A stretch of 64,000 bases of DNA from positions 32,364,001 to 32,428,000 of the forward strand of contig NC_043012.1 of assembly GCF_006345805.1 (NCBI RefSeq), given 5' to 3'. Positions 1 through 50,300 of the stretch are shown here, piece after piece. A model generated the notes under the pieces. It saw only the letters and a list, made by a program, of their open reading frames with translations. It was not told the DNA's origin and did not search any database. The translations under genes and the position numbers were made by a program. The first letter of the stretch is position 1, and each line of letters begins with the position of its first letter. Source of the stretch: Octopus sinensis. Lineage: Eukaryota.

Positions 1-920
1 GACAACCAGAAATGATGCGGTCAATTGTCTCATTGTACTAGTTTCACATTTTGCAATCGGTGTTAGGACCTGTTTTCATTATTTTGCTTTTCATGTTTGT
101 TTTTCTCCTCTGACAGTCCTCTGCAATGGATTGGTTAACCAGAAGTTGCTCCTTACAACCATACATCCCTCTCTGGCACCCCTTTTGATCTTCTGGTAAA
201 ACATTGTTGTTTTCCAACCCAGTTATAGATGACTGATGTGTGTTTCGTAGGATGTTGATAGACATGTTATCGGCCTATAATTTTGTGGTTGTGTGGTGTC
301 TTTATTTTGGGGAATTATGGTGGTTTGTTCTTCCAGCATCCAGTTCGGTGTTGATTCTGGCTTGCTTATTAAAAAATTAAATGTTGCTGCTATGTGGGTA
401 TGGGTACTGATGAGGTGTTTCAACCAGAGGGTGGGGACCTTGTCTGTCCCTGGAGTTTTTCAGTTGCTCGTATTCCTCAGTGTGACTGTGCTCTCTTGGC
501 CTGTGACGGTGGGCCATACCTATGTTGCTATTTTGTTCCTCCTTTCTTTTCTGGTTCCCTATTTACCCACCGAGAATTTTTGCTGTGTTATTTTTTCTTT
601 TTTTTCTTCCTTATCCCTTCCCAGTAAAACTAAATTGCTGATGTTGTTGGTATGTCATCTCTTGATATGGTATATTGTTTAACTTTATGTAAAGTCTTCT
701 CATGTTTATTTTAAATTCTCTATTTTCTTGGAAGAAGCGTTTCCCATTTTTCATACTGCTGTATGAGGCAATTTTTTGCTGCTATGTCCTGCTTAATTTT
801 TTTCTTTTACCTCTCAGGTATCTTCTTTATTTTTTATGTTGTATTGTTTTGTCATATGGACATTTTTATTTTTCATATTCGATCCCACTTTCTCTAGTTC
901 ACAAAGAAGTGATATTATTA
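1..920 (-). mobile_element. Degenerate non-LTR retrotransposon (R4/Dong-like, RLE type) RT N-terminal region
   Basis: Broken-frame peptides N*KTPGTDKV..LWLKHL, PNWMLE...QPQNYRPITCLST, LPEDQKGCQRGMYGCKEQLL. Confidence 0.8.
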
Positions 921-35000: not shown

Positions 35001-38000
35001 GCTACAAAAATATGATTTTAAGACAGATTTGTCACCAACTCTTACCTATTTCCAAGCAAATTTATATTTCCTTCAGTCAACTGAATAACGAACAACACAG
35101 ACATGCATTCACAAAGAACACCATTTAGTAAGTATCTTAACATTCATGCATCAAAAGTTAATATCCACTGAATTCTATCTAAATTATAAATCCCAACACC
35201 ACTATAAACAGTAGGCCGGAACTATCACTGATTTATAAACAAGAATTAAACAGCTGGAGAATGAAATAAGGTAAAATAAAACAGGAATCAACTGTGACTC
35301 TGCCATGTTCTAAGTGTCTTGTGGAGAAGATACAACATACAAGTGTAACAACTATATCCCCAAGGTTAAACTCTATCAAGAAATGAACAAAGGGGAAAAT
35401 TGCACATATAACATCTCGAGCACTTGTAGTGGGGGTTGAAGTGGGAAATACGAAAATCTGTGAAAATTCGAAATCAAAGTGAAATTCGATGACATGCATG
35501 AGCACCATACGAGCATGATCATTGACAGAGCGGCTAACTGGCTTCCGTGCCAGTGGCACAATAAAAGGCACCATTCGAGTGTGATCGTTACCAGCTTCAC
35601 CTTACTGGCACTTGTGCCCCGTGCTAGTAGGGTGCGAAGAGTACCACCTGAGCATGATCGTTGCCAGAACAGCTAACTGGCTTCTGTGCCGGTGGCATGT
35701 AGGAGGCACCATTTGAGAGGGATCGTTACCAGCATCACTTTACTGGCACCTGGGTCATTGGCATGTGTAAAAAAAAAAAAAAATTCAAGCGAGGTCATTG
35801 CCAGTACTGCCTGACTGGCCCCCGTGCCGGTGGCATGTAAAAGTACCCACTTCACTCTCGGAGTGGTTGGCATTAGGCAGGGCATCCAGCTGTTGAAACT
35901 CTGCCAGATCAAGACTGGAGCCTGATGCAGCCATCTGGTTGCCAACCCTCAGTCAAATCGTCCAACCCATGCTAGCATGGAAAGCGGACGTTAAATGATG
36001 ATGATGATTCTAAAATATGGAACAATTATTTTTTTTTTTATGACAGGAAATGAAGACCACAGACCCTGCAGGCTCTTTTTTCCCCAGTCTGGTGATACCT
36101 ATATGATATTCAGTTGGATGATGTTTTCTGAGATTATTAGATTGATAGTAGCAAAGGTATTTTTAAAAAGAATGCAATTCAATGGAAAAAGTTTTGACAA
36201 AGTGTTTAACCCTTTAATAGTAAAACCAGCCTTAACTGGATTAAATATTCCACCTGTTTTATGTTTTATATTCAAACCAGCCAGATCCAGTCTCTAACAC
36301 CCATTCTACAATGTCATTTCAAAAATAGACAATTACATCATCAAAATCTCAAGGCTACAGGATAAGTGATGATTAATTCAAAATAATGTGAATAAATAAG
36401 CAATTACATTTGACAGAGTGAGCTGAATTAAAAAAAATTAATGAAGTAGTCTTGGGTGCAAATCACAATATGAACAGTATGAGAGTTAGGTACATCAGAT
36501 GAAAGAGAGAGGGGGAGGGAGGGAGAGAGAGAGGGGGTACACAGTTACATAGAACATCTGAGACAGAAGGAGGGTTATAGTTATGATTTGAGAAACCGCA
36601 AATCAATATCCAATCAAATGAAACATTTTAAATTGTTTTGCTGATTTTATATTTAACTGTTCGCAGAATCTAATTCTTAAATTGAACAACACAAATCATC
36701 AGTTAATCAGAAAAAAGGGCTATTTTACACAACTTACCTGATAGTGTGCCTACACCAAATACTAGTGTTTGTACTATAGCATCTAGAGTGATAGCCGGGC
36801 CAAGCTTGGACATACCTTGTGCAATATTGTCCTGGACTTCATACTGAAAGAAAAATAGATTTCATGTAAAAGAAAATCCATAACCAAGGAAGGCCATAGA
36901 CATCTAGCAAGAAGTACAACTCTTTCTTCCATATTTCCCAGTCATCAGTCAACCTCCAACCCCACTCTTCCCAGTCACCATTCTTTGTTGTTGCTCAACT
37001 AACCTGTTTGTAATTTTCTTACACCTCTTCTACTGGAGGTTTGTCCATGTTTCAGCAATTCAAGTTGACATTAGTGTGAGAGACACAAAGATAGAAAAAG
37101 CTGCTGGCCCATCAGGAATAGTCAGAGGTGCTCAAAATATCTGACAATGTAGGATATGCCCTACTAGATCAATAAGAGGTAGACCTCCTACCATAACTTC
37201 TATGGCTAAGAAGACCCTTAAAGAGGGATGGAACGGGTAGACCAGAGCTATACGGATCCCCCTAAACAATGATCAGATTAAAAAGATGGTCACACATGCA
37301 ATGGGTGCAAGTACCAAAACCACATCAAGGGCCATATATTTAAGTTTAATGGCAAGATATAACACCCAAGAGGAAGTTGCAGCCATCGGTGTCAGTATCA
37401 CTGACAATGTGGCTAACTTATTTATGGTATGGTGAAATAGGAGACTTAAAGAGAAATTAGCAGAGAACTCCATAAACCTAACCATGTACTCCTGCTATGT
37501 GGATGATATCAACATAGTAGCCAAAGCACCCCTACAAGACAATGTTGATGATCTAGAAGCCTACACTATGGAGAGCATCCAGCAAATAGCTAACTCCATC
37601 CACCAGAGTATTGAAATAACTATGGACTATGCTAGTAAGCACCCAGACTATAGGTTACCCATTTTAGACTCAGAACTCTGGCTAGAAACAAAGAACGTTA
37701 AGGTCCAAATCCTTCACTTTCATCCAATTGCCCAGTGGTTAGGGCAGCGGACTCGCGGTTGGAGGTTCGCGGTTTCAATTCCCAGACTGGGCATTGTGTG
37801 TGTTTATTGAGCAAAAACATCTAAAGCTCCACGAGGCTCCAGCAGGGGGTGGTGGAGACCACCCGTTGTACTCTTTCTCTCACTCTTTCTTCCTGTTTCT
37901 TGTCCCTGACTTCCTACGCAACCGCTGAGCGTGGATGTGCATTCATCCATCCGTCGATGCTCTCGGTGTCGGGGGTTGACCTGCTTTCTCTTCTGCGGGT

Positions 38001-38767
38001 CTTACGAATAGCAAAGGACCATGTTTCGGACTTCTCCCACTACAGAGGCGCGATCTTGCGAGCTCTGGGATGAAGACCGCTTCGCTCAACAAACAAAGCA
38101 GCAGCAGCATCAATGACGGCAATAACAACAACTACCATAATTGCAACACACTGCCGTGGCCACCACCACTGTAGTTTTCAGTAACAAAGCTCATTTCATT
38201 TCCTAGCTGTAGATGTATCCTTACTCTGACAACTCTCTCTCTCTCTTTCTCTTTCTCAATGTAACTGCCTTCCCTGTTCATCTCTCTCTCTCTCTCAATG
38301 TAACTGCCTTCCCTGTCCATCTCCCTTCTCTCTCTCGCAATGTAACTGCCTTCCCTGTCCATCTCTCCTCTCTCTTTCTCTCTCGCAATGTAACTGCTTC
38401 CCCTGCACATCTCTATCTGCCTTTCTTTAACTTAACTACCCAGAACTAAACACATCTCTTTCTCTTTACCTTTCCCTCTCCACTTTACAGCACATCCTTA
38501 ACACTTCTCTCTCCCTCTTTTCTCTCACTGTCTTTTTCTATTGCTCTTTGCCTCTCCCTTCAACTTACCATGTGACACATTTGGCCTTATTATACACCTT
38601 TCTCTACTTCTTCCTCACTTCTTTCTTTTCCACTCACTCCTCCCACTTTCTCTCACTTTTACTCCACCTCTCTTACTAACTAAAGTATAACAGATGAACA
38701 AACAAGCAGATTATTATATTGATAATGAAATCCATGGAAAGATATTGCCTATGAGAATAGAGATATG

Positions 38768-38807
<40 letters not shown>

Positions 38808-41800
38808 CACTATGATGACCGTGACCGCCCAGGCTATCAGATGTTGCTACACATCGCTGGTCACAATGCACTTTGCATTGTTTTAGCCTTCAAATGTTGC
38901 CGCCCTGCTGGCTAAGTGAGCAGGCCAACAGAAGAAAGCGAGAGAAATTTGTGGCGAAAGAGTACAGCAGGGATTGCCACCCCCACACCCCCCCTGCCGG
39001 AGCCTCGTGGAGCTTTAGGTGTTTTCGCACAATAAACACTCACAACGCCCAGTCCGGGAATTGAAGTCGAGATCCTACAACCGCGAGTCCGCTGCCCTAA
39101 CCACTGGGCCATTGCGCCTCCACATTATATATATATATATATATACTACAAAATTAGAGAATGGAGAAACATACTTAAATCAATAAAACATCAACTATCC
39201 GATGATACCCAATCAATACTTTAATACACCATTACATATGAGTAAAGGCATTATATAAAATGAGATATACAGTAATAGTAAAAAGATAAAGAGATATAAG
39301 TAAAAAATTTTTTCAAATATAATATGCAATTAAATCAAAACTGACAGCTGTTTCGGCAGTGAGGGCAGTCATACCTCATTTAACCTCTTAGCCATAAAGG
39401 CAGGTATAAATGAGCATTAACAAGGATGCCCCACGGCCTCTTCAGAGAATTAAATTAAATTTGTTATAATTGTGAAAAATATAATATAACCATATACATA
39501 TAAATATAAAAATATAAAAATGTAAAATATAAAAAAATAAAAAACTTATACATCATAATGCTACACTTATATAATATAATACCTATTGGTACAATAAAGG
39601 AAGGTAAACAGAACAAAATAAAACAAAATATATATCAGTGTATATACTAATATTAATAAGTACCGATATTATACATATTTGGCTAATAGTTTTTTTTAAA
39701 AAAAATAACACATAGGGAGATGAAAAATAATAATTAAAACCATGGTTCAGTTCATAAAATTCTAAAGCTATGAAAGTTAATAAAAATTACTATTAATATT
39801 AATAATAATAATAATAATAAAAAAATAATAATAATAATAATAGATACAGTTAAGTTAGCACCAAGTCCATCCTTTCAAGATCGAAATAACTATGAGTTTT
39901 AGAAATGCTGATCACTAGGTAAAGAAAATTTAGATTAATTCGATTGGCTATTGGTTTGAAATTTAAATCACAAAAGAAAATTATACGGTTGGTTAGTCAC
40001 GGAACGCCAATATTCACACACGCATCTACAGATCAATCGCACATACACACATAGTTATATGTATATACATACACTTATACACATACATAATCACAAGCAA
40101 CAATAGCACATAGATAAACAAAAAGGGAAGCAGCTATGCTACCATTTAGTCCTTCAAAAATATAACTGTGCTTCAAATAACGAAAAAAGAACCACCCATG
40201 CATTTCATAAAATATTTAATTTAGATATAAATATATTTTTAAATATCAATATGTTACTAAGTCAGAAAATTATTTCATGGGTAACTTAAAATTTATAACA
40301 CCGGTTTGTTGCATAGTAAACATACGGTTGTTAGATTTATCGTAAGTTTGTTATGATTCCAAGTACGCTAAATTATAAAATATAAAATATATATTAATTT
40401 ATATATTATAAATAAATCACTTATTTACTTAATAAATTTAATGCCATAATATACCAGTTTAGGCATTAAAAAATAGAAGGGGAAGTACTAATGTAAACGC
40501 TTATGAGAACATCACAGAAATTTTATAAAAATTATATTATAAATACTTAAGGTAAAATGTGAAAAGATAAATAAGAAGGAATAAGAACTAAGGAATAAAT
40601 ACGGTTATACACATATAAGTACAAACCAGTATATATGTATTCATATATTATTAAAATTAAATAAAAATAAATGATAGATATGTATGTATAAAACTACCCT
40701 AGTATAAGTAAATAAGTAAAAAATAAATAGATAACAAATTAGATGACTTGATATGTATGTAAACATCTACACTTAAATAGGCAAATAAATAAATAATTAG
40801 AAGACTAAATGCAGAGATTGATAACATTACAATAAAATAAAATAAAATAAAAATAAAAAATAAATAAAGTGAATATATGTTATATTGTTGAAAGTAAATA
40901 TGTATGGAAGGATAATTTAAAGTACAGATCCAGAGGACTATAGATATAAACTAAATATATAAGGCTGGTAATATTTATAAAGCCAAATGTATGTAAATGA
41001 GAAAATGAAAAAAATGAAAAACATGAAAAAGGTTTATTAGTGAGTAGCATAAGATACAAATTAAGGTGAGTACAAAGAAAGACCAAATATACAATAAAAA
41101 CCTTCCAAAAAACACATACAAAAAACCTATATTCTCTACCTAAACACACCAAACTTATAAAAGGCTCTCATATATTACATATTATACAATATCCTTACAT
41201 TATCTAGAGCTAGGTATCTAACCAAGATATACATATATACTATGCAATATACTATGCAATATTAGAAAACTTCAAAAATCACATATTACAAGGCAAATAC
41301 CAAAGTGAATATGTTATATCGTGTCATATTGCATTTCCCTTAAAAAACAAACAAAAACCCACATACAAAAAACAAGAAACAAATAATACTAGACACATCT
41401 ATTATTTTATATACAATGTAGCTATAAAAATTATAAAATTATAAATTTATAATTTGTATACTTAAGAATTATAGAAGACCACAGGTATAGTTAGTTAAAG
41501 AAGGGAGTTAAAAAATTAATAATAGTGGAAGTGCTAAGTTCTATTTGAATCTAGAAAAGGTGAACGGTAGCCTATGAATGCAAAAGAAGTTTTTTTCATT
41601 AATGTTGTTAATAATTTGCCGACCCGCTTTAATAATGAAAAAAATTTCATTAATACATAGAGAGCATTTTTTATTTTTTCCATTATACACAGGTGCTGAA
41701 GTTAGTATTTTCCAGTTTAATCTAAAATCTAAGTTCTTACTTTTAAGTTCCCAAAGTAAGCACTTAGCCCTGTAGAGTACATTCTATTTTTATTTCTAAA

Positions 41801-44800
41801 AGTATATCTGTGATAATTCAATCTTGTTTTATGCTATTCATAGTTGCCCCGATATACACCCTACTACTCAATTGTGTATCTACAGTGCATTGGTAAACTA
41901 CCTCCTTCCTGAGGCATTGATTACCAATACACATTTATTTTTGTTTCTGCAATTACAAAGATTAACAGAATGAGGAAATCTAAGATTGGTCTCCACCCCT
42001 ATACTACCATTCACATTATAAGTGTTACAATTGTTATCATCATCCAAACCCAAAATCAACGAATGAGTTAATTTCACATTATCGGCTATATTCCTTCACT
42101 AGTACTAGTATTGGTAGTAGTAGTATGATCTATTACATTTATATTATCTCTGACAGGTACGGTGCACTCATTATTAGTAAGGGGGTTGTTCACATTCGTT
42201 CTAAGAAAGGTACTGTTCCTATTATTATTAGAGGGGCACATTTCCCTGGTCTAAATTCAATTTTCTATCCTTATAGAAGTGATCCAGTTCCTGTTATTAA
42301 AAGAGGAGATAATGGTGGCTAGATTATGGGTAATGCTATATCCCACTCTAACAGTACTGTTGTTAATTAAAGAACTAAATTTATTCTTATCCTTACCAAA
42401 ATGCCTAAATATAACATTACAGAGATGACGCCTTATTTTGTGTTAAGAATACATCAAATAGGAGATTAGATCTTCTGAAAAAAAGAATAAATAAATTTTT
42501 TAAAAGTTTCGGCCTATCCATTATCATTGAAAGTGAAAATTATTCTGCTAATTATTTAGATGTTAATTGTAACATTACTAATGGTTTACATAAACCCTAT
42601 ATTAAACCTAATTCTAACCTAATATATATTAACCGTTCAAGTAATCACCCCCCTCAAATTAAAAATGCACTAGTGCGTAGCATTAGTCAGAGAATTTCTA
42701 GTTTATCCTCTAACGAGGAAATTTTAACAAGCATTGTGATAGATACAATGCAGCATTGCTTAAGGCAGGATACAAAAGTAAGATATGGTTTATACCTAAG
42801 GGGAACCCTCCTAATGGAGGTAGAACTATCAGGAACAACACCAATAGATTTAGGATAAGCAACAATATACATATGAATAGTAAAAATGGAATATATGATA
42901 ACACCTATAATAAATGTAGAAGTGATGTTAACCTCGGAAAGGTGAACGGTAGCTCAAATAGATCTGAGCATACGGGTAATAGTAGTAATATTAATAATAA
43001 TATACTAATTAAAACTTATGGTAGACATGATAATGGTAAAGTTTACTTGCGCAATAACCATGGGAATATTGATATAGTTAGATATAACAATGACAGTGGT
43101 AAGAATAGTAATCCTATGGGTTGGTCTAGGAATAGGATTTTTACAAATAACAATAATTCTATAGGCAATCCTATTTCTGATAAGGATACACTATGGTTGA
43201 TTATCCCATATGCAATGCAGATTAAAACAAACATAGTGAGAGCTTTGCATAATGTTATATTTAGGCATTTTGGTAAGGATAAGAATAAATTTAGTCCTTT
43301 AATTAACAACAGTACTGTTAGAGTGGGATATAGCATTACCCATAATCTAGCCACCATTATCTCCTCTTTTAATAACAGGAAACTGGATCACTTCTATAAG
43401 GATAGAAAATTGAATTTAGACCAGGGAAATGTGCCCCTCTTTAATAATAATAGGAACAGTAACTTTCTTAGAACGAATGTGAACAACCCCCTTACTAATA
43501 ATGAGTGCACCGTACCTGTCAGAGATAATATAAATGTAATAGATCATACTACTACTACCAATACTAGTACTAGTGATAGGAATATAGCCGATAATGTGAA
43601 ATTAACTCATTCGTTGATTTTGGGTTTGGATGATGATAACAATTGTAACACTTATAATGTGAATGGTAGTATAGGGGTGGAGACCAATCTTAGATTTCCT
43701 CATTCTGTTAATCTTTGTAATTGCAGAAACAAAAATAAATGTGTATTGGTAATCAATGCCTCAGGAAGGAGGTAGTTTACCAATGCACTGTAGATACACA
43801 ATTGAGTAGTAGGGTGTATATCGGGGCAACTATGAATAGCATAAAACAAAGATTGAATTATCACAGATATACTTTTAGAAATAAAAATAGAATGTACTCT
43901 ACAGGGCTAAGTGCTTACATTTGGGAACTTAAAAGTAAGAACTTAGATTTTAGATTAAACTGGAAAATACTAACTTCAGCACCTGTGTATAATGGAAAAA
44001 ATAAAAAATGCTCTCTATGTATTAATGAAATTTTTTTCATTATTAAAGCGGGTCGGCAATTATTAACAACATTAATGAAAAAAAACTTCTTTTGCATTCA
44101 TAGGCTACCGTTCACCTTTTCTAGATTCAAATAGAACTTAGCACTTCCACTATTATTAATTTTTTAACTCCCTTCTTTAACTAACTATACCTGTGGTCTT
44201 CTATAATTCTTAAGTATACAATTATAAATTTATAATTTTATAATTTTTATAGCTACATTTGTATAATAATAATAGATGTGTCTAGTATTATTTGTTTCTT
44301 GTTTTTTGTATGTGGGTTTTTGTTTGTTTTTTAAGGGAAATGCAATATGACACGATATAACATATTCACTTTGGTATTTGCCTTGTAATATGTGATTTTT
44401 GAAGTTTTCTAATATTGCATAGTATATTGCATAGTATATATGTATATCTTGGTTAGATACCTAGCTCTAGATAATGTAAGGATATTGTATAATATGTAAT
44501 ATATGAGAGCCTTTTATAAGTTTGGTGTGTTTAGGTAGAGAATATAGGTTTTTTGTATGTGTTTTTTGGAAGGTTTTTATTGTATATTTGGTCTTTCTTT
44601 GTACTCACCTTAATTTGTATCTTATGCTACTCACTAATAAACCTTTTTCATGTTTTTCATTTTTTTCATTTTCTCATTTACATACATTTGGCTTTATAAA
44701 TATTACCAGCCTTATATATTTAGTTTATATCTATAGTCCTCTGGATCTGTACTTTAAATTATCCTTCCATACATATTTACTTTCAACAATATAACATATA

Positions 44801-46703
44801 TTCACTTTATTTATTTTTTATTTTATTTTATTTTTATTTTATTGTAATGTTATCAATCTCTGCATTTAGTCTTCTAATTATTTATTTATTTGCCTATTTA
44901 AGTGTAGATGTTTACATACATATCAAGTCATCTAATTTGTTATCTATTTATTTTTTACTTATTTACTTATACTAGGGTAGTTTTATACATACATATCTAT
45001 CATTTATTTTTATTTAATTTTAATAATATATGAATACATATATACTGGTTTGTACTTATATGTGTATAACCGTATTTATTCCTTAGTTTTTATTCCTTCT
45101 TATTTATCTTTTCACATTTTACCTTAAGTATTTATAATATAAATTTTTAAAAATTTCTGTGATGTTCTCATAAGCGTTTACATTAGTACTTCCCCTTCTA
45201 TTTTTTAATGCCTAAACTGGTATATTATGGCATTAAATTTATTAAGTAAATAAGTGATTTATTTATAATATATAAATTAATATATATTTTATATTTTATA
45301 ATTTAGCGTACTTGGAATCATAACAAACTTACGATAAATCTAACAACCGTATGTTTACTATGCAACAAACCGGTGTTATAAATTTTAAGTTACCCATGAA
45401 ATAATTTTCTGACTTAGTAACATATTGATATTTAAAAATATATTTATATCTAAATTAAATATTTTATGAAATGCATGGGTGGTTCTTTTTTCGTTATTTG
45501 AAGCACAGTTATAATTTTGAAGGACTAAATGGTAGCATAGCTGCTTCCCTTTTTGTTTATCTATGTGCTAGTTGTTGCTTGTGATTATGTATGTGTATAA
45601 GTGTATGTATATACATACAACTATGTGTGTATGTGCGATTGATCTGTAGATGCGTGTATGAATATTGGCGTTCCGTGACTAACCAACCGTATAATTTTCT
45701 TTTGTGATTTAAATTTCAAACCAATAGCCAATCGAATTAATCTAAATTTTCTTTACCTAGTGATCAGCATTTCTAAAACTCATAGTTATTTCGATCTTGA
45801 AAGGATGGACTTGGTGCTAACTTAACTGTATCTATTATTATTATTATTATTTTTTTATTATTATTATTATTATTAATATTAATAGTAATTTTTATTAACT
45901 TTCATAGCTTTAGAATTTTATGAACTGAACCATGGTTTTAATTATTATTTTTCATCTCCCTATGTGTTAGTTTTTTTTAAAAAAAAACTATTAGCCAAAT
46001 ATGTATAATATCGGTACTTATTAATATTAGTATATACACTGATATATATTTTGTTTTATTTTGTTCTGTTTACCTTCCTTTATTGTACCAATAAGTATTA
46101 TATTATATAAGTGTAGCATTATGATGTATAAGTTTTTATATTTTTTATATTTTACATTTTTATATTTTTATATTTATATGTATATGGTTATATTATATTT
46201 TTCACAATTATAACAAATTTAATTTAATTCTCTGAAGAGGCCGTGGGGCATCCTTGTTAATGCCTCATTTATACCTGCCTTTATGGCTAGAGGTTAAATG
46301 AGGTATGACTGCCCTCACTGCCGAAACAGCTGTCAGTTTTGATTTAATTGCATATTATATTTGAAAAATTTTTTACTTATATCTCTTTATCTTTTTACTA
46401 TTACTGTATATCTCATTTTATATAATGCCTTTACTCATATGTAATGGTGTATTAAAGTATTGATTGGGTATCATCGGATAGTTGATGTTTTATTGATTTA
46501 AGTATGTTTCTCCATTCTCTAATTTTGTAGTATTAATTTACGGTAATATTATTACCTTTACCCATATAATACAATAGATGAACTGATTGTTTGACAATTT
46601 TTAACATCTATGTATTAATCTTGTTGGGTACCTATCTGGCAGTATATTGGATATATATTATCCCATGGTGGGTTGAATTTTCAACCCCTATCTCATTTTA
46701 TAA

Positions 46704-46772
<69 letters not shown>

Positions 46773-47366
46773 GCTGGTGCAGAATTGTAATGAAAATACA
46801 TATTGAGAACTTCCATATGGTGCTCTTAAACATTGTAGCCAAATACCAGAAATCCAAAAAAATCAGAACTACAAAAAAATTGTTCTCATGGGTACTGCCT
46901 ACATCCTAAGAAAAACATTGTCAATCTGAAAATATCTCTTAAAACTCTTTCAAAACTCAAGTATTACAAATTTAACAGAATCTTAGTTCTCAGATTCTGG
47001 ACTCCTTCTCCTTCATATATTATTGACTGTCATACGTAACAAGGAATAGTAAACATCCATTTGCTGTTACAGGAGTCTCTGGGTGAAACGTGGAACAGCT
47101 TGTATAAAACAAAGTAACAACAATGTAAATAAATAAATAATAATAATAACAACAACAACTGTAGGTTAGTGGCTGAATATAGCTGAAGTGGCAAAAGAAA
47201 ATTATGACTGGCAGAGAAAATGATTTAAGAATGTCCTCAGCAGTCACGCCCCATGTTTCACTGCCATGTAGCATGACTGTTCGTACGCATGCGTCGTACA
47301 GTCTACCTTTTTACTCTGTTTGAATTACATAATAGTGGTTTTTCTCTCTATATATATATATAATAT

Positions 47367-47399
<33 letters not shown>

Positions 47400-50300
47400 T
47401 CGCTGGTGCAGAATTGTAATGAAAATACATATTGAGAACTTCCATATGGTGCTCTTAAACATTGTAGCCAAATACCAAGAAATCCAAAAAAATCAGAACT
47501 ACAAAAAAATTGTTCTCATGGGTACTGCCTACATCCTAAGAAAAACATTGTCAATCTGAAAATATCTCTTAAAACTCTTTCAAAACTCAAGTATTACAAA
47601 TTTAACAGAATCTTAGTTCTCAGATTCTGGACTCCTTCTCCTTCAATATATTATTGACTGTCATACGTAACAAGGAATAGTAAACATCCATTTGCTGTTA
47701 CAGGAGTCTCTGGGTGAAACGTGGAACAGCTTGTATAAAACAAAGTAACAACAATGTAAATAAATAAATAATAATAATAACAACAACAACTGTAGGTTAG
47801 TGGCTGAATATAGCTGAAGTGGCAAAAGAAAATTATGACTGGCAGAGAAAATGATTTAAGAATGTCCTCAGCAGTCACGCCCCATGTTTCACTGCCATGT
47901 AGCATGACTGTTCGTACGCATGCGTCGTACAGTCTACCTTTTTACTCTGTTTGAATTACATAATAGTGGTTTTTCTCTCTCTATATATATATATAGAGTG
48001 TGAAATTTGATTTAATACTAAATTGAATTTTTCCCTGTAAGTTTGGAGTTATACTCTCTAATATTATTATTATTATATATACATATATATATATGTATGT
48101 GTGTGTGTATGTATGTATATATATATATACACACACACACATATGTATGTATGTATACGCACACACATATGAAATTAAAGTTTAGAATGACCCAATGTCT
48201 GTATATAATCTGTATACATATAATTATAGATTGACTCAATTGAAAGCATTGAAATGGAAATTACTGATCAAAAGGAAACATAAGAACAGATTAGAAAAAA
48301 AAATGGTAGGAATCGTATGCTTACAGGTGAAGTTGAACCCAAGGCAAAGCAAGCAAGAGTACTGGCACTGGACAGATCAATAAGGAGAATCAAACAGGGA
48401 AATGCCTCACTGTAAAAGAAAGAAACATATTTTATACAAATTATATAAAGTGAATAAATGAAAAACAAACATACCAATCACATTTAAAGCAGCCATAAAA
48501 ATTGTATGGAATTCTGCTCATTAATTTATCCAGAAAAATTGCTGTTTTGTAGCTTTGTCAGAACCAAGAGCCACTCTCTTAGACAATATCTTTAAGAAGT
48601 GGCACGTAAAAGCACCCACTACACTCTCGGAGTGGTTGGCGTTAGGAAGGGCATATATGGAGCATATAGAGCCATCTCAGAAATGTTGGGTATGAGCAGT
48701 AAATGGCAGTTTATAGTGATTCATTTACTGTGAAGAGGGTATACATTAGTATATTTTCATAGCTACTGTTATTGTATTACTCTGGCAATCAACTGATCCA
48801 TTTCACCAGATATGCCACACCTCAGCTTAACTAAAGAGTATACAGTATGTCTCTAACACAGAGGCTTTACTAAACAGACTGTAGAGTTGCAATGTGGGTA
48901 AGTTGCATTCCTTGTCTTACCTGGCTGTGGATTTGGTGGTAGCCACCATAAACATGGGTAAAGTAAACTAAAAAAACAAGGTAGTTGCTGCTCTTATCAA
49001 GCCATATATCAGTTTACCAGTCTTGTTTCTATAACTGTGTTGGTATGAGTGAGAGAGAAGCTTGAAAGGCTTGGCTAGAACAAGTGCTAATTTGGGCAAT
49101 ATATTGTCTCAGGATAATGTTTAGATTCTATTTAAATCCTATTTTTCAAGGAGCAGACAAAATACTTAAATTGGTGGCAAAGAGACTGAGTTAATTTATT
49201 AGTAAGAAGAGTATATAATTTGAATTTAAGCATGTGGTTGTATGTAGTAAAAATTAGAAAATACAAAATGTGAAACTAAAATAATCATAAATCTTAAACA
49301 GTAGATAAAACTTTACAATTTCAAAAAATTGTTGCTTAAGGTCTTCACTTCCAAACTTCAAAACCATAACTTTTACACACACACACAACCAAGCAGTGCT
49401 AAGTACTATTTGTGAAATATATTTATAAAACTGATCAACTAAAGGTGATGTGTTTTAAGAAGTTTGCTTCCCAACCACATGGTTCTGGGTTCAGTCCCAC
49501 TACAAGGCACCTAGGGCAAGTGTCTTCTATTATAGCTTCAGACTGACTAAAGCCTTGTGAGTAGATTTGATAGACAGAAGCTGAAAAAAGTCCATTGTGT
49601 GTGTGTTTACATCCCTGTAACTTAGCAGATTGGCAAATGAGACCGTTAGAATAAGTACTGAGCTTTACAAAAAAAAACTAATTACTGGGATTGGTAAGTT
49701 CAACTAAAATTCTTCAAGGAAGTGCCCCAGCATGACTAGAACAAATAAAAGATAAAGGGCAAATCATAACTTTAAGTGCAACTTTTTTCCAAAATTAACA
49801 AAAATAACGGAAACAGTAGAAGGAAATGGGGGGGGGAGAAAGAAAACTCTAAATTCCTTTCAATGAGAATATTCTATCAAGACATCAGAAATTTGACTGT
49901 TATAAAAAGACATTGGATTCAACAGACATTTCTTCTATTTACAGTGAGAAGGCTCATCAGAATTATTTCTTTACCTTAACCCTTTTGTTACTGTATTATT
50001 TTGAGATACTCTGTGTTTCTTTCAATTACTTTAAATATAACAAAGAATTTAGTAAAATAACTTAGTTATCATTAAGCTGATGTTAGGAACATAAATTTTA
50101 CCACAGAGCCAGAGCCAGTTTTGGCCGGATTAGTAACAAAAGGGTTAAGTGAGTTATATAAAAATGTATTTGAAAGGAAATGGTTCATGCCAGTTTTCCA
50201 TCTGTTTAATGTGTATTGAACGTGATAGGATCTGTATTTTTATTGAATAAAACAATATCAGCAACATGTTTAACCCTTTTGATACCAACCTACCTGAGAT

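What the first reader, a model, noticed from the sequence alone, without database searches (positions are those of the whole stretch)
39332..39455. A sense-oriented ribozyme in the HMGCR pre-mRNA, preceded by its own antisense copy
Seen: HMGCR is transcribed on the minus strand, so the left-arm hammerhead (core intact) is sense within intron 4 and could cut the nascent transcript after 39343. Polymerase transcribes the complementary arm (46533 to 43250) first. Inference: the earlier antisense arm could base-pair with the ribozyme and silence it, so the palindrome would neutralise its own self-cleaving element. ADAR-mediated unwinding could tune this.
Basis: inference. Interest (0 to 1): 0.72.

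Follow-up and report, generated by a model that had tools for sequence, protein, structure and literature searches.

The report
Retrotransposon hammerhead inside an octopus HMGCR intron
The hammerhead motif is real, but it is the standard ribozyme of a Penelope-like retrotransposon that landed as a head-to-head inverted pair in an intron of an octopus-type HMGCR gene, so it is most likely an ordinary, inert passenger and not a self-silencing gene switch.

Summary
On the minus strand at 39445..39343 there is a complete hammerhead core: CUGAAGA, long helix II, GAAA, C-AGCU-G, UC, with cleavage after C39343. HMGCR is on the minus strand. The motif lies between coding exons 4 and 5. The complementary arm, 46532 to 43250, is transcribed first.

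The feature is not special to HMGCR. The 7.6-kb block 39137-46702 is one composite insertion of a Penelope-like element (PLE). It looks like the Hydra clade: a CxCX5C linker, a C-terminal GIY-YIG nuclease and (TA)n flanks. It consists of a 5'-truncated copy (42420-46702, +) joined head-to-head to a shorter inverted copy (42419-39137, -). Both copies carry the same intact hammerhead. An Octopus sinensis copy with an intact 783-aa ORF has the same ribozyme. Relatives elsewhere show the same inverted pairs and hammerheads with palindromic helix III.

This hammerhead type has a 2-bp helix III. Published tests of the type find it inactive as a single copy; it needs a dimer or the element's protein. 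Antisense masking is thermodynamically plausible, but it follows automatically from the head-to-head geometry. I judge it a new member of a known kind, of low interest.

The parts
39328..39458 (-). Left-arm hammerhead ribozyme motif, sense to HMGCR. Core CUGAAGA is at 39445-39439. Helix II (84 nt, interrupted) is at 39438-39355. GAAA is at 39354-39351. Helix III is C-AGCU-G, 39350-39345. U16.1 is 39344 and C17 is 39343. The predicted break is 39343|39342. Helix I strands are about 39458-39446 and 39342-39328.
46219..46349 (+). Right-arm hammerhead motif with the same intact core (CUGAAGA at 46232, GUC ending at 46334). It is antisense to HMGCR, and its minus-strand transcript is the complement of the left-arm ribozyme.
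39137..42419 (-). Inverted, more deeply 5'-truncated copy of the Penelope-like element (the left arm). It lacks the last ~170 nt of the element's 3' end. It carries CNCRNKNKC (41957-41931) and GIY-YIG remnants (VVYQCTV 41901-41881, YIGAT 41856-41842).
42420..46702 (+). Longer 5'-truncated copy of the same element. It starts inside RT motif C (RDDALF, 42421-42438) and runs through the 'spacer' and the right arm to the (TA)n. It is 92.5% identical over its whole length to an O. sinensis copy with an intact ORF.
43716..44134 (+). Endonuclease region of the right copy: CxCX5C linker (CNCRNKNKC, 43716-43742), a frameshift, then a GIY-YIG domain ORF (43739-44134: VVYQCTV, YIGAT, CSLC..E, CIH).
39119..39136 (.). 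(TA)n microsatellite abutting the left end of the insertion; one half of the target site.
46703..46770 (.). (TA)34 microsatellite abutting the right end of the insertion; the other half of the target site.
48313..48400 (-). HMGCR coding exon 4 (..[27 protein letters not shown]..), the last exon upstream of the insertion in the transcript. The 5' boundary is approximate.
36736..36846 (-). HMGCR coding exon 5 ([37 protein letters not shown]), the first exon downstream of the insertion.

Best explanation
The motif is the resident hammerhead ribozyme of a Penelope-like retrotransposon with Hydra-clade features. The element integrated into a (TA)n microsatellite inside HMGCR intron 4 of an octopus-type genome.

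Integration produced the usual PLE composite: a 5'-truncated copy (42420-46702, +) with a second, shorter copy joined head-to-head in inverted orientation (42419-39137, -). Each copy carries one hammerhead in its 3' untranslated region, about 200 nt (left) or 370 nt (right) from its outer end.

The ribozyme belongs to the element. It has a 2-bp helix III and the self-complementary stretch ACAGCUGU, so it is built to act as a dimer, and probably with the element's protein, on the element's own RNA. Its exact role is still unsettled in the literature.

In the HMGCR pre-mRNA it is a passenger. There is one sense copy, no cis partner, a competent fold that is not the MFE, and 3.3 kb of perfect antisense transcribed just before it. 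I expect little or no cleavage, and the intron is simply spliced out. If the insertion affects the host at all, the cause is more likely the 3.3-kb intronic RNA hairpin than the ribozyme.

Shown here: the motif, the element's identity, the inverted architecture, its recurrence at other loci, the host gene's strand and the intron. Inferred: inactivity in vivo, hairpin formation, and absence of any effect on HMGCR.
For: Core and fold of the motif:
- Sequence and pattern searches.
- Homodimer -88.7 kcal/mol against 2 x -40.8 for monomers, with an intermolecular extended helix III.

Element identity:
- The window ORF remnants hit a family of 74 proteins, plus 814 for the RT half. They share YRDDG..NYLDV..SNHPP..IIWFNPPYS..CNCRNKxxC..(I/V)Y..YIG..R..H..CxLC..E..CRH.
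- An AF2 model of the window's EN ORF (pLDDT 86.8) has as its best PDB matches the GIY-YIG nucleases T4 EndoII, I-TevI and Hpy188I.
- An AF2 model of a full-length relative matches reverse transcriptases, including TERT 3du5 at E=1e-7; 137 hits have E<=0.001.
- Pfam RVT_1 hits 3 of 30 relatives and GIY-YIG hits 2 of 30.

Hydra-clade hallmarks described in PMC8557442:
- The CxCX5C linker, CxxC and CxH motifs around the conserved E, a hammerhead, and (TA)n targets are all seen here.

Other copies of the family:
- O. sinensis locus L001 has an intact 783-aa ORF, the same hammerhead with a G-C to G-U change in helix II, and (TA)n on both sides.
- Relatives carry hammerheads with the same GAAA-CAG..CUG-UH palindromic helix III but different, self-complementary helix II (L002), and a variant in L004.
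- Head-to-head inverted copies with an asymmetric spacer occur at L002, L003 and L004, as the literature describes.

Low activity of this ribozyme type as a monomer: PMC4209133 and PMC11167929.
Against: - Rfam covariance models do not score the motif. The 84-nt helix II is atypical for PLE hammerheads and removes the usual loop-loop contact, so even dimeric activity is uncertain.
- Pfam does not recognise the window's own ORF fragments or the 783-aa octopus ORF.
- No direct terminal repeats (pLTRs) were found. The full unit is about 5 kb, larger than the <3 kb reported for Hydra elements.
- No phylogeny was made, so the clade assignment rests on motifs alone.
- My descriptor found no hammerhead in two relatives' loci (L003, L005).
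- Nothing here measures RNA, so 'inert passenger' is an expectation and not a result.
Confidence: 0.82

Rival explanations
1. The sense hammerhead can cut nascent HMGCR pre-mRNA. The earlier-transcribed antisense arm pairs with it and keeps it off, and ADAR editing of the hairpin tunes how much ribozyme escapes. The palindrome would then act as a self-neutralising, tunable brake on HMGCR expression.
For: The core is intact with an optimal GUC triplet. The sense orientation in intron 4 and the order of transcription are as stated. The duplex is far more stable than the ribozyme fold. Upstream complementary strands are known to block ribozyme assembly in vivo (PMC2817708, abstract). An intronic ribozyme can modulate its host gene (CPEB3, PMC10919898). 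Coleoid cephalopods edit RNA heavily (general knowledge).
Against: The architecture is generic for this transposon family and is found at unrelated loci. This ribozyme class is essentially inactive as a lone copy, so there is little to neutralise. The competent fold is not the MFE. The element copies are frameshifted pseudocopies, and nothing suggests selection on this locus. Editing would also damage the core adenosines (inference).
Confidence: 0.05
2. The hammerhead plays no part, but the 3.3-kb perfect intronic hairpin itself matters to the host. It could act as an ADAR hyper-editing substrate, a source of small RNAs against the transposon family, a structure that loops out 7.4 kb of the intron and changes splicing kinetics, or a fragile palindrome in DNA.
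For: The arms are about 99% complementary over 3.28 kb with an 830-nt loop, and both lie inside one transcription unit. Long intronic inverted repeats are classic ADAR substrates (general knowledge).
Against: No RNA data are available here. The differences between the arms show no A-to-G excess, though that comparison is at DNA level and says little. The AT-rich arms (24-28% GC) may be coated by proteins in vivo.
Confidence: 0.1
3. The motif is a chance match to the short hammerhead consensus in AT-rich transposon DNA and not a ribozyme at all.
For: Rfam finds nothing. Helix II is unusually long and interrupted. The consensus is short.
Against: 0.006 matches are expected per shuffled window. 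The motif is kept, with a pair-preserving change, in a copy that is 92.5% identical overall, about 97% within the motif against 86-93% for the 3' UTR stretches around it. Relatives of the same protein family carry hammerheads with the same palindromic helix III design next to their ORFs. The literature reports hammerheads as universal in this clade.
Confidence: 0.03

Closest known systems
Hammerhead ribozymes of Penelope-like elements (min-HHRs; Cervera & de la Pena 2014, PMC4209133; Arkhipova and co-workers)
   Same: It is a type-I hammerhead on the sense strand of the element's terminal non-coding region, with a canonical core, G10.1-C11.1, and a 1-2 bp helix III with a palindromic loop that allows a dimer. 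It is often found as two motifs on opposite strands or as lone motifs from truncated copies.
   Different: Helix II is 84 nt (about 30 bp with bulges) instead of 4-8 bp. No extra nucleotide between A9 and G10.1 is needed. Only one hammerhead occurs per copy and no pLTR direct repeat was detected.
Hydra clade of C-terminal EN+ Penelope-like elements (Craig et al. 2021, PMC8557442)
   Same: It has a single ORF with a short RT, a CxCX5C linker, a GIY-YIG nuclease without CCHH but with CxxC and CxH around the conserved E, a hammerhead, insertion into (TA)n, and aquatic invertebrate hosts including Mollusca.
   Different: The octopus unit is about 5 kb (783-aa ORF with two N-rich inserts, 2.6-kb 3' UTR) against <3 kb. 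Clade membership was not tested by phylogeny.
Complex tandem/inverted PLE insertions (Evgen'ev & Arkhipova 2005; Craig et al. 2021; Frangieh et al. 2024, PMC11167929)
   Same: An inverted 5'-truncated copy abuts the 5' end of a longer copy. The two 3' ends differ, which recalls the 'tail'. The PLE enzyme cleaves and extends both DNA strands in vitro.
   Different: The 3'-end difference here is about 170 nt, not 30-40 bp. Both copies are 5'-truncated, so neither is autonomous.
Functional intronic self-cleaving ribozymes (CPEB3 HDV-like ribozyme, PMC10919898; ultraconserved intronic hammerheads HH9/HH10 of amniotes)
   Same: It is a sense-strand self-cleaving motif inside an intron of a protein-coding gene, where cleavage would compete with splicing.
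   Different: Those ribozymes are stable, active monomers conserved at orthologous positions. This one is a young transposon copy with a dimer-type helix III and no evidence of conservation at the locus.
Intronic inverted-repeat retroelement pairs (for example inverted Alu pairs) as dsRNA and ADAR substrates
   Same: Two copies of one retroelement in opposite orientation inside one pre-mRNA can form a long hairpin.
   Different: Here both arms arose in a single integration event, are 3.3 kb long and about 99% matched, and carry a ribozyme motif.

Membership tests
Hammerhead ribozyme (type I, PLE/dimer type) | Invariant core C3 U4 G5 A6 N7 G8 A9 / G12 A13 A14 / A15.1-U16.1 / H17 | tested here: met
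   CUGAAGA .. GAAA .. GUC is read directly, and the exact pattern occurs on both arms.
Hammerhead ribozyme (type I, PLE/dimer type) | Three helices around the core, with a G10.1-C11.1 closing pair | tested here: met
   The constrained fold keeps helix I (2+4+4 bp), helix II (3+3+5 bp and a distal extension) and helix III (A-U, C-G) at -35.6 kcal/mol. The unconstrained MFE (-40.8) instead pairs core nucleotides.
Hammerhead ribozyme (type I, PLE/dimer type) | Short helix III with a palindromic loop, allowing an active dimer | tested here: met
   ACAGCUGU is self-complementary. The cofold of two copies forms an intermolecular helix III at -88.7 kcal/mol, against -81.6 for two monomers.
Hammerhead ribozyme (type I, PLE/dimer type) | Score above threshold with curated covariance models (Rfam Hammerhead_1/3/HH9/HH10/II) | tested here: not met
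   There is no hit at gathering score or at E<=10 in 38500-47500. A relative's short-helix-II motif reaches only 24 bits, E=0.06, with HH9.
Hammerhead ribozyme (type I, PLE/dimer type) | Helices supported by covariation among related copies | tested here: inconclusive
   The three octopus copies are 96-99% identical. Only one informative change was seen, G-C to G-U in helix II. More distant relatives have unrelated but self-complementary helix II sequences.
Hammerhead ribozyme (type I, PLE/dimer type) | Site-specific self-cleavage | not testable with these tools
   This needs in vitro transcription and cleavage assays or RNA end mapping.
Penelope-like element, C-terminal EN+ (Hydra clade) | Reverse transcriptase domain | tested here: met
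   At family level, the AF2 model of P0196 matches RTs including TERT 3du5 at E=1e-7, and RVT_1 hits 3 of 30 relatives. In the window only the part from motif C (RDDALF, 42421) onward survives.
Penelope-like element, C-terminal EN+ (Hydra clade) | C-terminal GIY-YIG endonuclease | tested here: met
   VVY..YIG..R..H..E motifs are conserved in 20 sequences. The AF2 model (pLDDT 86.8) has as its top PDB matches T4 EndoII (probability 0.96-0.98, E about 0.03), I-TevI and Hpy188I. Pfam GIY-YIG hits 2 of 30 relatives. Pfam misses the window's own ORF.
Penelope-like element, C-terminal EN+ (Hydra clade) | CxCX5C linker motif; no CCHH inside EN; CxxC and CxH flanking the conserved E/N | tested here: met
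   CNCRNKNKC is at 43716-43742, CSLC at 44009-44020 followed by E, and CIH at 44093-44101. The same pattern appears across relatives. Absence of CCHH was judged by inspecting alignment A2.
Penelope-like element, C-terminal EN+ (Hydra clade) | Insertion into (TA)n microsatellites | tested here: met
   (TA)n abuts both outer ends in the window, both ends of the O. sinensis copy and the hammerhead pair in L002.
Penelope-like element, C-terminal EN+ (Hydra clade) | Pseudo-LTRs (partial tandem) and/or an adjacent inverted 5'-truncated copy | tested here: met
   The inverted 5'-truncated copy is present and recurs in L002, L003 and L004. Direct pLTRs were not found in the window or in L001.
Penelope-like element, C-terminal EN+ (Hydra clade) | Phylogenetic placement of the RT within the Hydra clade; unit length <3 kb | not tested
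   No reference PLE set was available for a tree. Length was checked and does not fit: the unit is about 5 kb in L001.
Host-functional intronic ribozyme (CPEB3 type, HH9/HH10 type) | Stable monomeric active fold | tested here: not met
   Helix III is only 2 bp, and the competent fold lies 5.2 kcal/mol above the MFE.
Host-functional intronic ribozyme (CPEB3 type, HH9/HH10 type) | Conservation at the orthologous intron in other species | not testable with these tools
   No octopod HMGCR locus could be retrieved. The HMGCR search returned no cephalopod protein, and the window ORF is not on record.

The most novel reading that the evidence does not exclude
The lone sense hammerhead does cleave a fraction of nascent HMGCR pre-mRNA, for instance by pairing in trans with transcripts of other copies of the family or with help from the element's protein. 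On this reading the 3.3-kb antisense arm, modulated by the heavy A-to-I editing of coleoid cephalopods, sets how much escapes. A transposon-derived ribozyme plus its own antisense copy would then form an editing-sensitive brake on a rate-limiting sterol/isoprenoid enzyme.
Probability: 0.03. Interest if true: 0.75.

Novelty: new member of a known kind. Interest (0 to 1): 0.2.

Why it matters
It matters mainly as a correction. A striking 'ribozyme facing its own antisense inside HMGCR' turns out to be the normal anatomy of a Penelope-like element insertion. Scans should therefore expect paired, opposite-strand hammerheads wherever these elements land, introns included.

Three minor points of value remain:
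- It documents an octopus PLE family with Hydra-clade hallmarks and an intact 783-aa ORF in O. sinensis that NCBI names a 'GATA zinc finger' protein.
- Its hammerhead has an unusually long (84-nt) helix II that curated models miss.
- Sense-oriented intronic copies like this one would be natural test cases for whether PLE hammerheads ever cleave in vivo, and for how long intronic hairpins are handled in an animal with very active ADARs.

Tried and rejected
- Rfam on the whole window (gathering score) and on 38500-47500 (E<=10) returned only microsatellite-driven miRNA noise and no hammerhead.
- Pfam on the window's ORF fragments, on P0121 and relatives, and on the 783-aa octopus ORF gave nothing meaningful.
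- Profile searches of the PDB sequences with alignments A2 and A4 gave only spurious ASXL1 hits. Fold comparison was needed instead.
- The HMGCR protein search confirmed the gene but returned no cephalopod sequence, so neither the species nor an orthologous 'empty site' could be obtained. The exact-match look-up of the window's EN ORF found no record.
- My first generic hammerhead descriptor required 4 closing pairs in helix II and missed the motif, because of a C/U mismatch after 3 bp. The relaxed version was used.
- I looked for target-site duplications at the outer ends. None can be discerned beyond the (TA)n itself.
- I looked for direct terminal repeats (pLTRs) in L001 and found only (TA)n matches.
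- I looked for an A-to-G bias between the arms as a trace of editing and found none.
- My descriptor found no hammerhead in L003 or L005.
- ARAGORN finds no tRNA in the window, although tRNA-like SINE heads are present.
- I considered an assembly artefact (a missed-adapter palindrome) and rejected it. The structure is asymmetric: the 830-nt unique stretch continues one copy's ORF, the 3' ends are unequal, and the arms differ by scattered indels. It matches the family's structure at other loci.
Full report
**1. The observation**

Read on the minus strand, 39458..39328 is AAUUUAAUUCU-CUGAAGA-[84 nt]-GAAA-C-AGCU-G-UC|AGUUUUGAUUUAAUU. Every invariant hammerhead position is present: C3 U4 G5 A6 (A7) G8 A9, G12 A13 A14, the A15.1-U16.1 pair, and a GUC cleavage triplet whose C17 is base 39343.

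The first three pairs of helix II are G-C, G-C and C-G. Then come a C/U mismatch, 3 bp, a bulged U, 5 bp and a further imperfect hairpin. Helix I is 2 bp, a 2x2 loop, 4 bp and 4 bp.

A descriptor taken from this sequence has zero chance expectation. A generic descriptor (core, a G-C closed helix II of at least 3 bp and up to 120 nt, an even palindromic helix III, UH) finds only the two arm copies, against a mean of 0.006 per dinucleotide-shuffled window; 3 of 500 shuffles had one hit. A stricter version missed the motif. Rfam finds no hammerhead at gathering score or at E<=10. The likeliest reason is the very long helix II combined with a minimal helix III.

**2. The palindrome and the host gene**

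The arms 39137-42419 and 43250-46532 are inverted copies. They differ by about 25 substitutions and about 15 single-base indels, and 830 nt lie between them. Both arms carry the same hammerhead core. They differ only by two 1-nt indels in distal helix II, so the right-arm ribozyme is as intact as the left one.

HMGCR motifs (EGCLVAS, DAMGMN, GTVGGGT) lie on the minus strand. The concatenated exon peptides hit thousands of PF00368 proteins. A tblastn map places the coding exons as follows:
- 56758-~56595, the ATG exon ([20 protein letters not shown])
- ~56488-56378
- 54383-54285 (a weak match)
- ~48400-48313
- the insertion
- 36846-36736, then 34961-34815, and so on down to 15375-15220

The element is therefore in intron 4 counted from the ATG exon. 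The left-arm hammerhead is sense to the pre-mRNA, and the right arm is transcribed first, as antisense. I confirm the observation.

**3. What the arms are**

On the plus strand, the spacer and the right arm read as the 3' part of a retroelement ORF:
- RDDALF (42421)
- NYLDV (42550)
- SNHPP (42640)
- a long N-rich stretch
- CNCRNKNKC (43716-43742)
- a frameshift
- VVYQCTV...YIGAT...R..H...CSLC..E...CIH (43739-44134)

Pfam does not recognise these fragments. A protein search does find relatives: 74 hits, the best being an Octopus sinensis protein at 87% identity.

The locus of that protein is L001, on O. sinensis chromosome record CM016888.1. It aligns with window 42418-46772 at 92.5% over 4.4 kb, and with the left arm in reverse. 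L001 contains an intact 783-aa ORF, the same hammerhead 2.1 kb downstream of the stop codon, and (TA)n on both sides.

The 'spacer' is therefore not a spacer. It is the extra 5' part of the right-hand copy (42420-46702). The left arm is a second copy, more deeply 5'-truncated, joined to it head-to-head. The left copy also stops about 170 nt short of the full 3' end. The whole composite, 39137-46702, is bracketed by (TA)n at 39119-39136 and 46703-46770.

**4. The family**

- Relatives share a conserved layout (alignments A2, A3, A4)..FDV.MG..DGAEVCELVG...GLYRDDGL...NYLDV...Y.KP...YI...SNHPP...IIWFNPPYS..V.TN...KHFP...CNCRNK..CPL.G.C...(I/V)Y.A.V...YIG.TE..FK.R..NH..SF....LSK.IW.LK...W.I....Y....C.LC..EK......LN...E....CRH.
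- The AF2 model of the window's EN ORF (pLDDT 86.8) has as its best PDB matches T4 EndoII, I-TevI and Hpy188I, all GIY-YIG nucleases. The E-values are weak, about 0.03, with probability 0.96-0.98.
- The AF2 model of a full-length 564-aa relative (pLDDT 79.8) matches reverse transcriptases: retron and DRT RTs, TERT 3du5 at E=1e-7, group II intron RT, LINE-1 ORF2p and R2. In all, 137 matches have E<=0.001.
- Scanned one by one against Pfam, 3 of 30 relatives reach RVT_1 and 2 of 30 reach GIY-YIG. No other family recurs.

An RT fused to a C-terminal GIY-YIG nuclease is the defining architecture of EN+ Penelope-like elements. Craig et al. 2021 (PMC8557442) define the Hydra clade by these features:
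- a CxCX5C linker in place of CX2-5CxxC
- loss of the CCHH motif
- CxxC and CxH motifs around the conserved E/N
- readily detected hammerheads
- hosts among aquatic invertebrates, including Mollusca
- insertion into (TA)n in almost all families

All of these are seen here. Two things do not fit: the unit is about 5 kb, not <3 kb, and I found no direct pLTRs. I made no tree. 'Hydra-clade-like PLE' is the supported label. PLEs are annotated in octopus genomes (PMC13282606).

**5. The inverted pair is a family trait, not a property of HMGCR**

[quoted passage not shown] Frangieh et al. 2024 (PMC11167929) showed that a purified PLE protein cleaves and extends both DNA strands and starts reverse transcription at internal sites, which explains the variable 3' 'tails'.

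The loci of three relatives fetched here show the same architecture:
- L003: arms of 1510 nt, 100% matched, 688-nt gap
- L004: arms of 553 nt, 976-nt gap, with a hammerhead-like motif just beyond each ORF end
- L002: arms of 184 nt with an 18-nt gap, and arms of 287 nt with a 1224-nt gap

In L002, two hammerheads also face each other across a (TA)n.

In any head-to-head pair the antisense arm is transcribed before the sense arm, whichever strand is read. 'Preceded by its own antisense copy' is therefore automatic.

**6. Would the ribozyme act on the HMGCR transcript?**

Helix III is only A-U and C-G closing an AGCU loop, and ACAGCUGU is self-complementary. Relatives have GAAA-CAGUACUG-UC and GAAA-CAGGCCUG-UA, the same design with different and internally complementary helix II sequences. 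This is the dimer-type metazoan PLE hammerhead.

Published activity of this type is low:
- Cervera and de la Pena report that a single motif gave no detectable cleavage, and that dimers were weak and mostly needed non-physiological Mg2+ (PMC4209133).
- Frangieh et al. found that their PLE hammerhead cleaved only when the element's protein was added. They also found that cleavage was dispensable for insertion in vitro and that RNA-seq showed no ends at the site.

Calculated energies for this motif:

| Structure | Energy (kcal/mol) |
|---|---|
| Cleavage-competent monomer fold | -35.6 |
| Unconstrained MFE, which pairs C3-G5 with the CAG of helix III | -40.8 |
| Homodimer with an extended helix III | -88.7 |
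| Duplex with the antisense arm segment | -252 |

The pre-mRNA holds one sense copy only, because the other copy is antisense. The long helix II also removes the usual loop I/loop II contact that makes type-I hammerheads fast at cellular Mg2+. That last point is inference.

The ribozyme sits at the outer end of the second-transcribed arm. A hairpin nucleated at the 830-nt loop would zip up to the ribozyme as it emerges, which is also inference.

Masking is thus plausible, but there is probably little activity to mask. ADAR editing would convert core adenosines (A6, A9, A13, A14, A15.1) as readily as flanking ones, so it is not an obvious 'on' switch (inference from general hammerhead biochemistry).

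A 2026 preprint reports that tandem hammerhead retrozymes derived from PLEs are depleted from vertebrate introns (10.64898/2026.07.22.740005). This fits the idea that active, tandem, dimer-capable copies are harmful in genes. It says nothing against a lone copy being tolerated.

**7. State of the copies**

Both window copies share a frameshift immediately after CNCRNKNKC relative to the intact L001 ORF, and the right copy has another near 42720. They are 5'-truncated and non-autonomous.

Within the 138-nt ribozyme region the window and L001 differ at 5 positions (about 97% identity), against 86-93% for the 3' UTR stretches around it. One of these changes turns a helix II G-C into G-U. This is a mild hint of constraint at family level and too little for a covariation test.

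**8. Verdict**

The feature is real and correctly located. It is a known kind of object, a PLE hammerhead in a standard inverted PLE insertion, here in a new host family and with an unusually long helix II.

The self-neutralising, ADAR-tuned switch is not excluded, but nothing specific supports it. I give it about 3-5%. If the insertion affects the host at all, the cause is more likely the long intronic hairpin than the ribozyme.

No step in this work needed referral.

Noticed in passing
window 46749-48007: A ~630-bp tandem duplication (two units, 96-100% identical) lies immediately right of the insertion. Each unit begins with a (TA)n tract and carries on the minus strand a LINE-type RT C-terminal fragment ([22 protein letters not shown]; 47310-47023 and 47941-47654). 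It is unclear whether the duplication is linked to the PLE integration.
   Followed up: partly
window 37725-37849 / 38990-39114, and many other sites (e.g. 62759-62556, 52425-52267, 23365-23207, 3562-3353): A tRNA-like SINE (head GGCCCAGTGGTTAGGGCAGCGGACTCGCGG..) is scattered through the HMGCR introns on both strands. One inverted pair ends 5 bp from the (TA)n at the left edge of the PLE. ARAGORN calls no tRNA.
   Followed up: partly
window 38239-38519: A CT-rich tandem array of ~40-48-nt units (CAATGTAACTGCCTTCCCTGT core) lies in the intron just downstream (in the transcript) of the insertion.
   Followed up: no
L001 7566-9917 (Octopus sinensis CM016888.1, about 5.018-5.020 Mb): An intact 783-aa RT-GIY-YIG ORF of the same PLE family is flanked by (TA)n. 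Part of it is annotated in NCBI as 'GATA zinc finger domain-containing protein 14-like' (P0121). This is probably a misannotation caused by two asparagine-rich inserts in the ORF. An intact ORF suggests that the family was recently active.
   Followed up: partly
L002 8376-8484 and 2904-3213; L004 3184 and 5155: In relatives from unidentified ENA eukaryote contigs, hammerheads occur as inverted pairs. In L002 two sit tail-to-tail across a (TA)n. L004 has a variant, CUGAUGA-UCGCUUAGUGCGU-GAAA-CUCGAG-UA, whose helix II closing pair is not G-C, about 50 nt past the ORF stop.
   Followed up: partly
window 43742-43775 and about 42720; left arm about 41931: Both window copies share a frameshift right after the CxCX5C motif, and the right copy has a second one. 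The arm-to-arm differences are dominated by 1-nt indels and TA/AT swaps. Some of these could be long-read assembly errors and not mutations.
   Followed up: partly
window 56758-15220 (minus strand): The HMGCR gene spans more than 41 kb here, with at least 16 coding exon segments detectable by tblastn. The sterol-sensing-domain exons flank the insertion. The last detected coding exon is 15375-15220 (..[12 protein letters not shown]).
   Followed up: partly
window 1-460 (minus strand): The window edge holds reverse-transcriptase-like ORF fragments (..RPITCLSTSYETHISHL.., ..EDQKGCQRGMYGCKEQLLVNQSI..) typical of a LINE. They are unrelated to the PLE.
   Followed up: no
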